Assembly: GCA_025603075.1 (NCBI GenBank)
Contig: MU626360.1
Span: forward strand, 1-64,000
Length of the DNA: 64,000 nt
Origin: Neoconidiobolus thromboides FSU 785
Taxonomy: Eukaryota > Fungi > Entomophthoromycota
Reading direction: 5' to 3'
The number at the start of each line of letters is the position of its first letter. The stretch's first letter is position 1. The notes under the pieces are model-generated. The model saw only the letters and a list, made by a program, of their open reading frames with translations, was not told the origin of the DNA and did not search any database. The position numbers were made by a program, and so were the translations under genes. Positions 38,966 to 54,031 of this stretch are shown piece after piece.

Positions 38966-40297
38966 ATGAGTTTAACCTTTGAGTTTCTATCTGAGATTTT
39001 ATTAGAAGAAATTTTCAAATATGTGAGTCCAATCGAATTATTTAATCTACAATTCTTAAACAAATATCTATTTAAAGTTGTTAACAATGTTATTAAATTC
39101 AATTTAACTTATTCAATTTATAATGGATACAAATTTAAGGAATACTATGAGTATCAAAATAAATTTATTAAGGAAAATGGAGGACTAATGAAACATGTCA
39201 GTATAGAAGGTAGGACGATTGAATGCTTAAAAGATTTTTTGAATGTAACATCTATAGAATATACACAACTATATAATAATGAAAATAATGATCAGAACAA
39301 CAATAAACTAAAGATGCAACTACCAGGATTAAAGAAATTAGTTATACATTCATCTAATTACGCACAAACGTTGATGTTCTTTAAAGATTACTTAAAGCAA
39401 CTTGAAGTAGTTCAGATTAATAGTCATAATTTTACTATTGAAGATATTATCACAAATTTGAATCCAGCCAAGTTAGGATCACTTGTATTAAATGCAAATG
39501 GTAGTTCTTTATACCTTCAGGGATTAGATATTATCAAAACAAAATTCAATAAGCTAAAGAAATTACAATTGAAGGCAGATAAATATATTTATTCTAGTGA
39601 GAATAACCCAAAAATAAATTTCACTTCTAGTTTAGAATTGAAAATTGAAGGAAAATTTAACAGAGATTTTAGTTTAGACATTCAATATTTTGGTAACTTA
39701 CAGAATTTAAAAAGTGTGATGTTGTTACATAGATATGGTGAATTCTTTAATAGAATAAATAAACGTGTCAACATAAAATCATTAAAGATATGTAATAAGG
39801 TTATTTTGGGGTATTTTGATTCAAGGCATTCGATTGATTACGACTTTTTAAGATTACCCAATCTTAAGCAGATTTATGTTAGTAGTTTAGATAATGAATT
39901 ATTAAAATCAATTTTTTTTTTATCAAATATTAAAACAATTCAAGTTCATGTTTTCCATACTTTTGGTTTTTATAGAGAAATGTTCTATAATATTAGTGAT
40001 GCAAATAGTAAGAATCTTTATACAGAAAAGCGTGGATTGATCCAATGTCCATTTGTAAAAGAAATTGAAGTTAATATTTTTGCTAGTTCTTATGTTAATT
40101 TTCTTCTTTTTTTATCTTTATTCCCAAACCTTGAGATACTTAAGATTACTGATTTTTATTTAATGGGTATAGTAGACACAGAAGTAGAGCTTAAACTAAC
40201 TACTCCGCTGTTATTACTTGTTACTATCCCAGATGAATCAAATTTAGCTTATGAAGAAGTGGAAAAGATCCCAATGTTAAATTGGATTAAATTGTAA
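38966..40297 (+). CDS. F-box protein with LRR-like C-terminal region (paralogue A, intact)
   Basis: N-terminal LSEILLEEIFKYVSPIELFNLQFLNKYLFKVV fits the F-box consensus; repeated LxxLxL-type motifs (LKKLVI, LKKLQL, LKSVML, LKQIYV, LEILKI). 443 aa, intronless. Confidence 0.75.
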   Translation: MSLTFEFLSEILLEEIFKYVSPIELFNLQFLNKYLFKVVNNVIKFNLTYSIYNGYKFKEYYEYQNKFIKENGGLMKHVSIEGRTIECLKDFLNVTSIEYTQLYNNENNDQNNNKLKMQLPGLKKLVIHSSNYAQTLMFFKDYLKQLEVVQINSHNFTIEDIITNLNPAKLGSLVLNANGSSLYLQGLDIIKTKFNKLKKLQLKADKYIYSSENNPKINFTSSLELKIEGKFNRDFSLDIQYFGNLQNLKSVMLLHRYGEFFNRINKRVNIKSLKICNKVILGYFDSRHSIDYDFLRLPNLKQIYVSSLDNELLKSIFFLSNIKTIQVHVFHTFGFYREMFYNISDANSKNLYTEKRGLIQCPFVKEIEVNIFASSYVNFLLFLSLFPNLEILKITDFYLMGIVDTEVELKLTTPLLLLVTIPDESNLAYEEVEKIPMLNWIKL

Positions 40298-45239: not shown

Positions 45240-45768
45240 TCAAGCAATATTTAAAGTCATAGAACCTTGAAACAGTTTATTTTAATGCACAAAGTTTAAA
45301 CGAACTGTAAGATAATATAACAACTCTCAATATGTTTTGATGTTATTTATTTTCTTATAATGCTAATAAGAAACCAAAGAAAGTAGTTGAACATATTCAA
45401 AATATGAATAGTCTAATATCAATCCAGTAAGAAATAAAACATTTTATATAAAAAATCAAAATGTATATAAACTTTCAATTCAAAGTAGTGACTGAATATC
45501 TTTGTTCTCAGCAACTATGCCAAAGTTCCAGAGGCTCAAAAAAGGATATTGGTTTTATACATAAAAAGGGTAAGTTTTTAATTACTGATAAAGGTTTAAA
45601 TAAGCTATTTTTATATACCAAGTTTGGTAATTTAGTACAATTCATTAATGTTAATTTCCTTAATCATAAACATCTTGTGTTTAGGAAAAAAGCGGAAGTT
45701 AGAGGTAGATATTAAGGAATAGTTCATGATCTAGTAAGCTTTTTGCTAATAAAGTTACCCTTCAAATA
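45240..45768 (+). pseudogene. Truncated relic of the secreted beta-propeller gene at 48835-49695
   Basis: GTTCCAGAGGCTCAAAAAAG vs GTTCCAGAGGTTCAAAAAG in the intact gene. Peptide KGKFLITDKGLNKLFLYTKFGNLVQFINVNFLNHKHLVF vs NDKILVIGEGSNKIFLYTKLGILVETIDASFFELKHLVF; SSKLFANKVTL vs SSKLLVDEITL. Left boundary approximate. Confidence 0.75.
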
Positions 45769-46980: not shown

Positions 46981-48084
46981 ATGAAATATTTGTTACTTAC
47001 ATCTTTAATATTAAATTTAGTGGCTAGTCATGCTACTATGGAAAAACCAGCTATTCGTGGAAATACCGAAAATTGGGGTTTCTGTGATAGTGAAGAAGGT
47101 TGTCCTGGACCTTGTGAAACACCCAAAGATAAAGTAGATTATACTTATCGTCAAAAAGAAGTTTATCAAAGAGGAGCAAAGATTCCAGTTGAATGGAAAA
47201 GACTTAATCACCCTGGAGGTTTTGTAAGACTTGCTATTGTACCAACCGAACAAAGTGATGATAAACAAGCTTTTGATCAAAATGTTTACCAATATTCTTG
47301 TTTTGAATCTAATTGTAAACAAGATGACAATATTGATGATTCTTTCCATGGTTACATGGCTGGACCTAACTTTGCTAATAATCATCCCCAATGTAGTACT
47401 GAATTCGTTATTCCACCACATTTAGAAGATGGTGATTATACTTTACAATGGATGTGGTTCTCTGGTGGCGTTAACACTGGTGATCGTTTCAGAGCCTTTG
47501 GTAATTATTATGCTTGTGCTGATTTAAAAATTCGTGGTGGAAATAAAGGTGAAAAACCACCAGTAGCTTTTATTGGTAAAGATGCTGTAACTGAAGATCC
47601 AAAACAATGTCGATTCTGGGGTAAGAATGATGAATATTCTTGTGAAAAGAGTTATGATGCAAGTAATCCAGATAAATGTCCAAGAGGTGGCCCTCGTCTT
47701 GGTGCACCTTCTGCTTTCTCTGTTGGTATTTCTGGTGAACAGTCTAATAGAGGTATCCCATTTGAAGCTCCAGAATGGTACAAACAAAAATATCCACAAG
47801 CTGATGTTATGCCACAAAGTCCAGTAAATTGGACTCCTCCAGAAAAGTATAACCCTAATCCATATAATCAAGGTGCTCCATTTATTGAAACTAATCATAA
47901 CAAACAACAAAATCAAGAACAAAAGCCTGTAGAACAAAAGCCTGTAGAGCAACAAAAAAATGGACAAGATTCAGTTTGGACCCCACCTCCAGGTTATAAT
48001 CCATACGCTGAAGGACAACCATTAGCTGGTAAAACTCCAGTTTGGACCCCACCTCCAGGTTATAATCCATATGGCCAAAATTAA
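46981..48084 (+). CDS. Secreted histidine-brace LPMO-like protein (AA11-like fold) with Pro/aromatic repeat tail
   Basis: Signal peptide MKYLLLTSLILNLVAS then His at mature position 1 (HATMEKPAIR); second His at mature position 61 (NHPGG); IPPHLEDGDYTLQWMWF; YYACADLKI; intronless. Confidence 0.75.
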   Translation: MKYLLLTSLILNLVASHATMEKPAIRGNTENWGFCDSEEGCPGPCETPKDKVDYTYRQKEVYQRGAKIPVEWKRLNHPGGFVRLAIVPTEQSDDKQAFDQNVYQYSCFESNCKQDDNIDDSFHGYMAGPNFANNHPQCSTEFVIPPHLEDGDYTLQWMWFSGGVNTGDRFRAFGNYYACADLKIRGGNKGEKPPVAFIGKDAVTEDPKQCRFWGKNDEYSCEKSYDASNPDKCPRGGPRLGAPSAFSVGISGEQSNRGIPFEAPEWYKQKYPQADVMPQSPVNWTPPEKYNPNPYNQGAPFIETNHNKQQNQEQKPVEQKPVEQQKNGQDSVWTPPPGYNPYAEGQPLAGKTPVWTPPPGYNPYGQN

Positions 48085-48834: not shown

Positions 48835-49695
48835 TTAAAGAGTAATTTCATCAACAAGAAGTTTACTTGACCCTGAATTATTTCCTAATACCCATACTTT
48901 ACTTCCATCTTTTTCGCTAAACACGAGATGCTTGAGCTCAAAGAAGCTAGCATCAATGGTTTCCACTAAAATACCAAGCTTGGTATATAAAAATATTTTA
49001 TTTGAGCCTTCACCAATAACTAAAATCTTATCGTTTTTAATAGGTAAAATGGATACTACTTTTTGAACCTCTGGAACATTAGCAGTAATTGGTGCATAGA
49101 AACTTGCTTGATCATTGTACACAGAAAGTTCAAAAACATTCTTATCTTGGGCATAAAATAAGCTATCTTTTGCTTCATCCATAACGAAATGATTAAGATC
49201 TCCAAGATGGCTAAGTATTATTTTTGGTTTATCAGTACCGTCACAAGAAAATAAAATACCATCTTTAGTAGCTCCAAAGATAGCTCCACTTTTAGTCAAA
49301 GCTAAGCCTGCCACCTGTTGAGTTGATAATTCACTAAAATCACAATAAACTTCAGCACTATCGTATTGTCCAGCACCTTGTTTAGTAGCTTTATAAATTT
49401 TTCTATCATCCAAATTTGCAAAATAAAGATTATTCTCATCAAATAAGGTAGCAGTTGCTTTAAAGTTTCCTGAGCGGATAAATAAGGCTTCTTTATACCC
49501 ATTAATAATTCTAAAGTATCTACCTTTACCTTGAGATTCATTATGGAAAGAGGCATACACAGCTTTATGGGTTGGATCATAAGCAGGGGCATTTACAGAG
49601 GTATCTAGATTGGATAGCGATTCATTTAAATAATTCTTAATTTGCATACCAGTAACCAGCTGGCCAAGAACTAAGGTGAATAAAAAATATTTCAT
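48835..49695 (-). CDS. Secreted beta-propeller protein (probably 6 blades; NHL/SMP-30-like architecture)
   Basis: Signal peptide MKYFLFTLVLGQLVTG; roughly 40-aa repeats of four-strand blades (TLFDENNLYFANLDDRKIYK; GLALTKSGAIFGATKDGILF; FVMDEAKDSLFYAQDKNVFEL; ILPIKNDKILVIGEGSNKIFLY). Confidence 0.65.
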   Translation of the reverse strand: MKYFLFTLVLGQLVTGMQIKNYLNESLSNLDTSVNAPAYDPTHKAVYASFHNESQGKGRYFRIINGYKEALFIRSGNFKATATLFDENNLYFANLDDRKIYKATKQGAGQYDSAEVYCDFSELSTQQVAGLALTKSGAIFGATKDGILFSCDGTDKPKIILSHLGDLNHFVMDEAKDSLFYAQDKNVFELSVYNDQASFYAPITANVPEVQKVVSILPIKNDKILVIGEGSNKIFLYTKLGILVETIDASFFELKHLVFSEKDGSKVWVLGNNSGSSKLLVDEITL

Positions 49696-52818: not shown

Positions 52819-54031
52819 TTATTTGAGTTTAATTAAATTCAACATTGGGATTCTTTCAGCTTCATCATAATAAGCTAGATCCGCTTCATATGCTATAGGG
52901 GCAATAAGTAACAGAGGAGTAGTAAGACTATACTGAACTTTTATGTTTATACTTTCCAACTTAAAAGAGTCTCTAATTTTAAGAAGTCTAAGACATGGAA
53001 AAAGGGCCAAAAAACATAAAAGTGTATTAAATGAAAAGTTAAATTTATCAATTGAAATTTCTCCTATAGAATTGCACTTAATTGAATTATATTTTTTATT
53101 ATAAAGATCGTTTCCATTTAAATTAGTTTTGTTAAATATTTCCTTTACATTAAAACAAAGCTCATCAAAATAAATAGTTTGGATATTTGTTAATGGTGAA
53201 ATTAAATGTAATATGTTTTTTGAAAATTTATTGAAATAAATTTTTTTTAATGTTGGTAGCTTTGAAAAATTATAATGAATTATGTCGTTTGAGTTGAATT
53301 TTCCTAAAGAAACAATGTTGCCATTTTCAATTAAAGTTAAACTATCATCCTCATTGTCAATATCAGAATAAGAAGTATTACAATCAAATAATTTCATCTT
53401 TCTTAATTGCTTCAAATTATCTAAACATTTTATATAAAGATTATCTGATCCTCCTTTGATTGTTGATTCTATATTTGCACTAAGATTAATATAGGAATCA
53501 AATAGAGTAGGAATAAGAATTGTTTTTTTTGATTTTAGATGTAGAAATCTTAATTTCTTAAACTTTTTAATAATATCTAATCTATCAAGATGAAATATAC
53601 AATCAGAATACATTTCCAATACTTTTATTTTATATGAATCCAGGCCCTTGATATTGTCTTCAATAAGTGCAAGATTCCCATTAATTTCGGAAATTTAACG
53701 GTTAGTTTATTATAATGTTTATTGAATAATTGTGTATAAGCTATAGATACTATATTAGGACAAAAGTTTAAAAGTTCAATTGTATCATCATTTATATTTA
53801 TATGCTTTATCAATGCTCCATTTTCTATAGTAAATTTTTTTTGATAGTTGTAATATTTTCCATATTCATCATGATCATAAACCCAATGAATTAGATGAGA
53901 CTTGATGACTTTTCCAACAACTTTAAACAAGTACTTATTTAAGAAACATACGTTGAATAGATCAATTGGATCGAAGTATCTAAAAATGTCTTTAGTAAAA
54001 TCTCGGATAGATATTCAAAGGTTAAACTCAT
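52819..54031 (-). pseudogene. F-box family paralogue E, frameshifted
   Basis: ATG AGT TTA ACC TTT GAA TAT CTA TCC GAG ATT TTA CTA, then a 1-nt deletion. ORFs 53625-53930 and 52819-53619 carry the middle and C-terminal parts (LTTPLLLIAPI...ERIPMLNLIKLK*). Confidence 0.8.

What the first reader, a model, noticed from the sequence alone, without database searches (positions are those of the whole stretch)
46981..47560. Secreted histidine-brace protein: candidate new LPMO subfamily
Seen: predicted cleavage VAS|H puts His at mature position 1, with a second His at 61 (NHPGGFVRLAI). Also present: a beta-sandwich motif IPPHLEDGDYTLQWMWF, a Tyr pair at 160-161 (NYYACAD) and multiple Cys. Established: LPMOs bind copper through His1, a second His and an axial Tyr/Phe; AA11 chitin-active enzymes show HGGG-S-C and Y.LAWTWF...YMNCA at the equivalent positions. 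The HPGGFVR and YYACAD variants here differ from canonical AA11. Inference: a divergent copper-dependent monooxygenase, plausibly acting on chitin (insect cuticle or own cell wall), or a non-catalytic copper-binding protein like X325.
Basis: partly seen in the sequence, partly recalled or inferred. Interest (0 to 1): 0.75.

Follow-up and report, generated by a model that had tools for sequence, protein, structure and literature searches.

The report
Unclassified AA11-related LPMO family member
This gene of an insect-pathogenic fungus encodes a secreted protein with the fold and copper-binding histidine pair of the oxidative polysaccharide-cleaving enzymes called LPMOs. It belongs to a large, unnamed eukaryotic family that is distinct from every named LPMO family I could test and probably acts on chitin.

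Summary
The gene is longer than reported: one ORF at 46981-48084 (+), 367 aa. It has a 16-residue signal peptide, His17 as mature His1, His77 (mature 61) in NHPGGFVRLA, Tyr176/177, ten Cys and a Pro/Gln-rich tail.

The genome is Neoconidiobolus thromboides FSU 785. It holds five paralogues of this protein and also canonical AA11 genes.

Pfam and NCBIfam give no hit. A whole-library profile search finds 561 cluster representatives. All 99 with a complete N-terminus have His at profile position 1, behind a -3/-1 signal-peptidase site; the second His is kept in 98% and the aromatic at 176 is Tyr or Phe in 95%.

Distant relatives are fused to GH18 chitinase, CBM18 and a cupredoxin.

Verdict: a probable copper LPMO of an undescribed AA11-related family, likely chitin-active. 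No copper binding or activity has been shown. dbCAN/CAZy models could not be run. The scan also noted this same stretch in an overlapping window (s1-062773).

The parts
46981..47028 (+). Signal peptide, residues 1-16 (MKYLLLTSLILNLVAS)
   Evidence: ORF. Hydrophobic core KD 2.75 and Val at -3, Ser at -1. The same layout occurs in homologues. SignalP was not available.
47029..47031 (+). Codon of His17, the mature N-terminal His1 (first histidine-brace ligand)
   Evidence: His in 99 of 99 family proteins that reach profile position 1. It aligns with His1 of AoAA11 4mah and of the AA11 profile. Model residue 1 aligns with chain residue 1 of most LPMO structures; where the entry uses precursor numbering it aligns with that chain's first listed residue.
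47029..47541 (+). LPMO-fold core, residues 17-187 (beta-sandwich with the long loop 92-137)
47209..47211 (+). Codon of His77 (mature His61), the second histidine-brace ligand, in NHPGGFVRLA
   Evidence: His in 98% of 167 family proteins. It aligns with His60 of AoAA11 and with His63 of the AA11 alignment.
47506..47511 (+). Codons of Tyr176 and Tyr177 (mature 160/161). Tyr176 is the likely axial-position aromatic. Asn175, just before, occupies a site that is Asp or Glu in 79% of the family.
   Evidence: Position 176 is Tyr 82% / Phe 13%; position 177 is Tyr in only 56%. HMMER pairs Tyr176 with Tyr140 of AoAA11. hhalign shifts the register by one residue, so this is unresolved.
47542..47718 (+). 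Family-specific Cys-containing C-terminal extension, residues 188-246 (consensus F.GGD...C.YW..N..G.C...EPC)
   Evidence: It is part of the family profile in nearly all members; Cys210, Cys221 and Cys233 are kept in 91-98%. The sequence-level alignments to AA11 (HMMER, hhalign) end at about mature residue 170-200, although the structural alignments to AA11 chains run on to model residue 230-234. The region is modelled at pLDDT 83-95.
47719..48084 (+). Pro/Gln/Asn-rich, probably disordered tail, residues 247-367, plus the stop codon. It carries three W-T-P-P-x-x-Y-N-P motifs starting at 47830, 47977 and 48043.
   Evidence: Composition P 22, Q 15, N 12 of 122 residues. Two DNA-identical 26-nt copies occur here and nowhere else in the genome. 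There is a 15-nt tandem repeat at 47916-47952. There is no hydrophobic C-terminus, so no GPI signal. The paralogues have different tails or none.

Best explanation
The gene encodes a secreted lytic polysaccharide monooxygenase (LPMO) that uses a single copper ion.

Proposed mechanism:
- Signal peptidase cuts after Ser16, so His17 becomes the free N-terminus.
- Its amino group and side chain, together with His77, hold one copper ion (the histidine brace) on the surface of a beta-sandwich.
- Tyr176 sits in the axial-position site below the copper.
- Once reduced, the copper uses H2O2 or O2 to oxidise and break glycosidic bonds of a crystalline polysaccharide.
- The most likely substrate is chitin, either insect cuticle or the fungus's own wall.

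The protein belongs to a large eukaryotic family. The family is homologous to CAZy family AA11 but separate from it. It has its own motifs (HSxLxxPxxR, NHPGGFVRLA, [D/E/N]-[Y/F]-x-x-C) and an extra Cys-rich C-terminal subdomain. Here a disordered Pro/Gln-rich tail follows.

Shown: the sequence features, their conservation, the LPMO fold of the model, the remote homology to AA11, the separation from AA11, and the domain fusions in relatives.

Inferred: the cleavage site, copper binding, catalysis and substrate.
For: - Gene: intact 367-aa ORF. Contigs of public runs cover only 46989-48067 and not the flanks. One is a 1026-nt gapless contig; another run is a polyA metatranscriptome. This is consistent with an unspliced transcript.
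- His brace: His1 in 99/99, second His in 98%, Tyr/Phe in 95%; residue -1 is small in 98/99.
- Homology to AA11: family profiles against 4mah give E 9e-6 and 4.4e-8, aligned from His1. hhalign against an AA11 alignment gives 96.3%, E 1.6e-9.
- Separate from AA11: an AA11 HMM scores 120 AA11 proteins at 152-247 bits, the family at 29.4 or less, and this protein at 16.4. The two groups split with 100% support in the tree. The same genome has canonical AA11 genes.
- Family size: 561 representatives at E<=1e-3 and 88 at E<=1e-30. Five paralogues in this genome.
- Chitin: of 87 long members, 5 carry CBM18 and 2 carry GH18; one of the GH18 fusions also carries a cupredoxin.
- No Pfam or NCBIfam hit. 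All named homologues are 'hypothetical protein' in NCBI.
Against: - No experiment: copper binding, activity and substrate are all inferred.
- The chitin hint comes from distant relatives (about 25-30% identity). This protein has no carbohydrate-binding module.
- The residue next to the aromatic is Asp or Glu in 79% of the family but Asn here and in its clade. In AfAA11B, replacing the second-sphere Glu with Asn lowered performance (PMC12186267). Whether the two positions are equivalent is unresolved.
- Model coordinates could not be read, so the brace geometry is not verified.
- dbCAN/CAZy models were not available. Papers report dbCAN 'AA11' expansions in Kickxellomycotina and Entomophthorales (PMC9866270, PMC11105155), and these could include this family.
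- The runs laid are contigs whose RNA status is partly a guess.
Confidence: 0.6

Rival explanations
1. It is a non-catalytic LPMO-like copper-binding protein in the manner of X325/Bim1. It would bind copper at the cell surface for uptake or wall homeostasis without cleaving polysaccharide.
Confidence: 0.17
2. It is just a divergent member of CAZy family AA11 that routine dbCAN/CAZy annotation already captures, so there is nothing new in kind.
For: AA11 is the best sequence and structure match. The N-terminal H-x-x-M/L-x-x-P-x-x-R and T-L-x-W-x-W motifs are shared with AA11. dbCAN studies report AA11 expansions in Kickxellomycotina and Entomophthorales (PMC9866270, PMC11105155). No Coemansia or Kickxella protein appeared among the 120 listed canonical AA11 hits, although those genera hold this family.
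Against: My AA11 HMM gives 16.4 bits here against at least 152 for real AA11s. The best PDB AA11 score with family profiles is 29-37 bits, far below the usual dbCAN cut-off. Structural Z to AA11 is no better than to AA15 or AA9, within about 1. The family has an extra conserved C-terminal subdomain and a different spacing of the acidic and aromatic residues. Canonical AA11 genes in the same genomes can explain the published counts.
Confidence: 0.15
3. It is an active LPMO, but on a substrate other than chitin, for example cellulose, beta-glucan or another cell-wall or host glycan.
For: One relative carries CBM2. Six relatives give weak AA9 Pfam hits. The family occurs in red algae and other non-fungal eukaryotes. 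This protein has no CBM.
Against: GH18 and CBM18 fusions outnumber the others. The nearest characterised families, AA11 and AA15, are chitin-active. The host organism is an insect pathogen with a chitinous wall.
Confidence: 0.15

Closest known systems
CAZy AA11 chitin-active LPMOs (AoAA11 4MAH/4MAI, AfAA11B 9EXJ/9HDG, AfAA11A 7P3U)
   Different: Identity is only about 17-24%. An AA11 HMM scores this protein at 16 bits against 152-247 for AA11s. The motifs differ: NHPGGFVRLA instead of H-x-GG-H/S-CQ-F/V-SL, and [D/E/N]-[Y/F]-x-x-C instead of E-x-Y-x-x-C. There is a long Cys-containing loop (residues 92-137), and an extra conserved Cys-rich extension of about 60 residues that sequence alignments to AA11 do not cover. 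The two groups are separate clades that coexist in the same genomes.
AA15 (Thermobia domestica 5MSZ) and AA10 LPMOs (Pfam PF03067)
   Different: There is no PF03067 hit for this protein at E<=10 and none anywhere in the genome. The alignments cover only the core, residues 1-171.
X325 / Bim1-like LPMO-like copper proteins (LaX325 6IBH/6IBI, Pfam PF20238)
   Different: No PF20238 hit and no GPI-anchor signal. The protein is larger, and its relatives are fused to glycoside hydrolase and chitin-binding modules.

Membership tests
LPMO superfamily (copper histidine-brace beta-sandwich) | Mature N-terminus is His, created by signal-peptide cleavage | tested here: met
   VAS|H fits the -3/-1 rule. His is at profile position 1 in 99/99 homologues, 98 of them with a small residue at -1. 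Cleavage itself is inferred.
LPMO superfamily (copper histidine-brace beta-sandwich) | Second conserved His and an axial-position Tyr/Phe at the positions seen in solved LPMOs | tested here: met
   His77 is kept in 98%; position 176 is Tyr/Phe in 95%. They align with His60 and Tyr140 of AoAA11. The register of the Tyr is uncertain by one residue.
LPMO superfamily (copper histidine-brace beta-sandwich) | Immunoglobulin-like beta-sandwich fold | tested here: met
LPMO superfamily (copper histidine-brace beta-sandwich) | Binds one Cu and oxidatively cleaves a polysaccharide | not testable with these tools
   Needs protein, EPR and product analysis.
CAZy AA11 | Family-level sequence similarity to AA11 catalytic domains (as dbCAN/CAZy would require) | tested here: not met
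   Proxy HMM built from 64 AA11 domains: AA11 proteins score 152-247 bits, this protein 16.4, and the best family member 29.4. The real dbCAN model was not available.
CAZy AA11 | Tyr-Glu second sphere with E-x-Y-x-x-C spacing (E139/Y141 in AfAA11B, PMC12186267) | tested here: inconclusive
   Here the sequence is N-Y-Y-A-C; the family motif is [D/E/N]-[Y/F]-x-x-C. HMMER and hhalign disagree on the register.
CAZy AA11 | Detectable homology and closest fold | tested here: met
X325 / BIM1-like | PF20238 domain match | tested here: not met
   No hit at E<=10.
X325 / BIM1-like | C-terminal GPI-anchor signal | tested here: not met
   The tail ends ...WTPPPGYNPYGQN with no hydrophobic stretch. No GPI predictor was run.
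X325 / BIM1-like | Asp as an additional copper ligand | tested here: inconclusive
   A conserved Asp/Glu lies next to the aromatic residue in the family, but it is Asn in this protein. The geometry could not be read.
AA10/AA15 (PF03067) and AA9 (PF03443) | Pfam family match | tested here: not met
   No hit for this protein at E<=10. PF03067 is absent from the genome scan. The only PF03443 signal in the genome is a weak hit on a canonical AA11 gene.

The most novel reading that the evidence does not exclude
This protein and its 560 or so cluster relatives form an uncharacterised, eukaryote-wide LPMO family. It is found in early-diverging fungi, red algae and many unnamed protists in metagenomes. 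On biochemical proof it would become a new CAZy AA family. It would be chitin-active and have its own second-sphere layout (an acidic residue adjacent to the axial-position aromatic) and a Cys-rich C-terminal subdomain. Some members are naturally fused to a GH18 chitinase and a cupredoxin that could act as a built-in electron donor.
Probability: 0.4. Interest if true: 0.72.

Novelty: new variant of a known kind. Interest (0 to 1): 0.6.

Why it matters
New LPMO families have repeatedly changed views of how organisms attack or remodel recalcitrant polysaccharides (AA11, AA13-AA17).

This family is abundant in lineages where LPMO biology is almost unstudied. These include insect-pathogenic and mycoparasitic early-diverging fungi, and red algae. 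It is invisible to Pfam and NCBIfam and is annotated only as 'hypothetical protein'. CAZyme counts for these organisms may therefore understate their oxidative chitin machinery.

In an aphid pathogen with five paralogues, the family is a candidate for cuticle breaching or wall remodelling.

The natural LPMO-cupredoxin-GH18 fusion in a relative offers a testable model for a built-in electron supply.

The different placement of the second-sphere acidic residue gives a natural variant for mechanistic work on how LPMOs control H2O2.

Tried and rejected
- Pfam and NCBIfam scans of the protein: the only hit is a meaningless 12-bit defensin-like match.
- Apparent Kunitz/trypsin-inhibitor similarity of residues 207-240 (1ytp, E 0.41): not significant; it reflects Cys spacing.
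- AA18 as a possible home: it is the bacterial jellyroll enzyme CelOCE and is unrelated.
- Searches for 'AA19/AA20/AA21' and for LPMO with Amoebozoa: nothing relevant.
- Supplements of the Entomophthora (PMC11105155) and Kickxellomycotina (PMC9866270) papers, to see which genes were called AA11: not held, or no occurrences.
- Functional linkage with the neighbouring secreted propeller: its paralogues do not accompany the other four LPMO-like genes, so it is recorded only in passing.
- Tail motif WTPPPGYNP as a shared module: it occurs only in this gene.
- First structure model from 16 sequences: mediocre (pLDDT 69), replaced by the 89-sequence model.

Full report
**What is there**

The finding lies at the start of a single uninterrupted ORF, window 46981-48084 on the + strand, 367 aa.

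The window is AT-rich eukaryotic DNA, about 26% GC, with ordinary eukaryotic genes: an E2 enzyme, a syntaxin, a class-3 lipase, a prolidase-like peptidase and F-box proteins.

The organism can be named. One paralogue in the same assembly encodes a protein letter-identical to KAI9297706.1 of Neoconidiobolus thromboides FSU 785. A canonical AA11 gene of the assembly matches a partial (188-aa) NCBI protein of that strain at 100% identity over 93% of the query region. N. thromboides is an entomophthoralean insect pathogen (my own knowledge). The assembly is 24.6 Mb in 799 contigs.

**Checking the observation**

All the listed features are present:
- Signal peptide MKYLLLTSLILNLVAS.
- His17 (codon 47029-47031).
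- His77 (codon 47209-47211) in NHPGGFVRLAI.
- IPPHLEDGDYTLQWMWF.
- Tyr176/177 in NYYACAD.
- Ten cysteines.

No signal-peptide predictor was available, so I used conservation instead. A profile of the family was run against 1.84 billion cluster representatives. It found 561 proteins at E<=1e-3, 390 at E<=1e-10 and 88 at E<=1e-30.

Among the 170 sequences I retrieved:
- All 99 that reach profile position 1 have His there.
- 98 of those 99 have A/G/S/C/T at -1, and V/A/T/S/I/C dominate at -3.
- In 83 the His lies at residue 15-40, behind a hydrophobic core.
- The second His is kept in 98%.
- Position 176 is Tyr in 82% and Phe in 13%.
- Cys179 is kept in 99%.

This is the signature of a histidine-brace protein, not a chance pattern.

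**Fold**

A first model from 16 sequences was mediocre (pLDDT 69). A second from 89 family domains reached pLDDT 87.5 and pTM 0.89.

With Foldseek, the 50 matches shown are all LPMOs or LPMO-like proteins, 48 of them at E<=1e-3; the four AA11 entries come first.

|---|---|
| AA11 | 10.8-11.8 |
| AA15 | 10.7 |
| AA9 | about 9.2-10.4 |
| AA13 | 9.8 |
| AA10 | about 9-9.5 |
| AA16 | 9.2 |
| X325 | 8.9-9.1 |

Model residue 1 aligns to chain residue 1 in most of these; where an entry keeps precursor numbering it aligns to that chain's first listed residue. The fold is therefore unambiguous. On structure alone, however, AA11 is only marginally nearer than AA15 or AA9.

**Relation to AA11**

Sequence profiles single out AA11:
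- The 16-sequence profile hits AoAA11 (4mah) at E 9e-6, aligned from His1 to the end of the core.
- A 29-sequence diverse profile hits 4mah at E 4.4e-8. The two other AA11 chains come next; AA9 chains follow from E 2.6e-4, and AA15 and AA16 sit near E 0.1.

The same genome contains canonical AA11 genes. One example is G000:C124 (L006 1339-2307), which scores 116 bits to AfAA11A 7p3u. This gave me a legitimate AA11 query. Its homologues include several N. thromboides paralogues, large Basidiobolus expansions, Entomophthora, Conidiobolus, Piptocephalis, Syncephalis, Dimargaris, Smittium, chytrids and many Ascomycota.

Three comparisons followed:
- hhalign of my family alignment against an AA11 alignment gave 96.3% probability and E 1.6e-9 over 131 columns. 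His1, the second His and the aromatic-Cys motif were paired.
- An HMM built from 64 AA11 domains scored all 120 AA11 proteins at 152-247 bits. It scored the 170 family proteins at no more than 29.4 bits, and this protein at 16.4.
- In a joint tree the two groups are separated with 100% support. This protein falls in a 97%-supported clade of ten with its four N. thromboides paralogues and the Entomophthora muscae copies, inside a wider Zoopagomycota/Mortierellomycotina group.

So the family is homologous to AA11 but is not AA11 by any test I could run.

**What distinguishes the family**

- Consensus motifs HSxLxxPxxR, C..G..C.GPC, RNNH.GGFVRLA, TLQW.WFGG and FGDYYSC.D.
- A long Cys-containing loop (residues 92-137 here, poorly modelled).
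- A conserved extension of about 60 residues, F.GGD....C.YW..N..G.C...EPC, that the sequence-level alignments to AA11 do not cover. It is modelled with good confidence.

The second sphere also looks different. AA11 has E-x-Y-x-x-C (E139/Y141 in AfAA11B, PMC12186267). This family has [D 65%/E 14%/N 6%]-[Y/F]-x-x-C.

HMMER pairs Tyr176 with the AA11 axial tyrosine. hhalign instead pairs the acidic residue with the AA11 Glu, and Tyr177 with the Tyr, by opening a one-residue gap. Because position 176 is the conserved aromatic, I favour Tyr176. Coordinates were not readable, so this stays open.

In this protein and its clade the acidic residue is Asn.

**Substrate and function**

The protein has no recognisable binding module. 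Its last 121 residues are a Pro/Gln/Asn-rich tail with three W-T-P-P-x-x-Y-N-P motifs. Two of them are encoded by identical 26-nt stretches found nowhere else in the genome. Disordered C-terminal regions are described for fungal LPMOs (PMC10990093, seen as title and abstract only). The tail has no hydrophobic end, so a GPI anchor is unlikely.

Across 87 longer family members, Pfam finds:
- CBM18 in five.
- GH18 chitinase in two.
- CBM2 in one.
- Weak AA9 hits in six.

One protein (P0085) combines the LPMO-like domain, a plastocyanin-type cupredoxin and GH18.

Three things make chitin the best guess: these fusions, the nearness to chitin-active AA11 and AA15, and the chitin-rich lifestyle of the organism. 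Whether the target is host cuticle or the fungus's own wall cannot be told.

**Expression**

Contigs from several public runs lie on 46989-48067 and not on the flanks:
- One contig of 1026 nt matches 47000-48001 without a gap or mismatch.
- A polyA metatranscriptome holds 95-100% identical pieces.

This fits an unspliced, expressed mRNA. These are contigs, though, and the RNA label of most runs is a guess.

**Is it known?**

- Pfam and NCBIfam give nothing for this protein.
- Every named homologue is 'hypothetical protein' in NCBI. UniRef calls two of them 'Chitin-binding type-4 domain-containing protein'.
- As of 2026, papers list LPMO families AA9-AA11 and AA13-AA18. AA18 is the unrelated bacterial CelOCE.
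- I found no paper describing this family.
- dbCAN-based studies report AA11 expansions in Kickxellomycotina and Entomophthorales (PMC9866270, PMC11105155). Canonical AA11 genes in those lineages can account for this. I could not check gene lists or run dbCAN, so a looser CAZy model might already catch the family.

**Rivals**

- 'Plain AA11' fails the proxy HMM test.
- A non-chitin substrate remains open.

**Verdict**

This is a probable secreted copper LPMO from a large, unnamed, AA11-related eukaryotic family. It is a new variant of a known kind, with no biochemical evidence yet.

- No SignalP, dbCAN or GPI predictor was available.

Noticed in passing
window 48835-49695 (-): A secreted 286-aa protein lies tail-to-tail with the LPMO-like gene, 750 bp away. 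It has no Pfam or PDB sequence hit, but its Atlas model matches SMP-30/gluconolactonase/LRE six-bladed propellers at TM 0.77-0.83. A lactonase beside a C1-oxidising LPMO would make biochemical sense. However, propeller paralogues do not accompany the other four LPMO-like genes.
   Followed up: partly
window 45347-45691 (+): A decayed copy of the propeller gene (31% identity, 2 TAA stops) lies upstream of the LPMO-like gene, so the two copies flank it in mirror orientation.
   Followed up: no
G000:C124 (L006 1339-2307): A canonical AA11 LPMO gene in the same genome, 322 aa with a Ser/Gln-rich tail, scores 116 bits to AfAA11A 7p3u. At least three further canonical AA11 paralogues of N. thromboides appear in the database.
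   Followed up: partly
G000:C126, C8, C18, C44 (L002-L005): Four intact paralogues of the LPMO-like gene (41-46% identity) are all single ORFs with a signal peptide and His1. Two have long Ser/Thr/Asn-rich tails and two have none.
   Followed up: partly
P0085 (metagenomic relative, 1515 aa): A natural fusion of the LPMO-like domain (31-207), a plastocyanin/azurin-type cupredoxin (384-479) and a GH18 chitinase (770-1138). P0096 is an LPMO-like domain plus GH18.
   Followed up: no
window 47977-48002 and 48043-48068: Two DNA-identical 26-nt stretches encode WTPPPGYNP and are unique in the genome, which points to a recent internal duplication. PPPGY also reads as a PPxY motif, probably meaningless in a secreted protein.
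   Followed up: partly
window 38966-40297 (+) and 52819-53619 (-): F-box/LRR-like ORFs lie on both sides of the LPMO-like gene. Only the first gave a weak F-box Pfam hit. They look like paralogues in inverted orientation, as earlier notes of the scan say.
   Followed up: no
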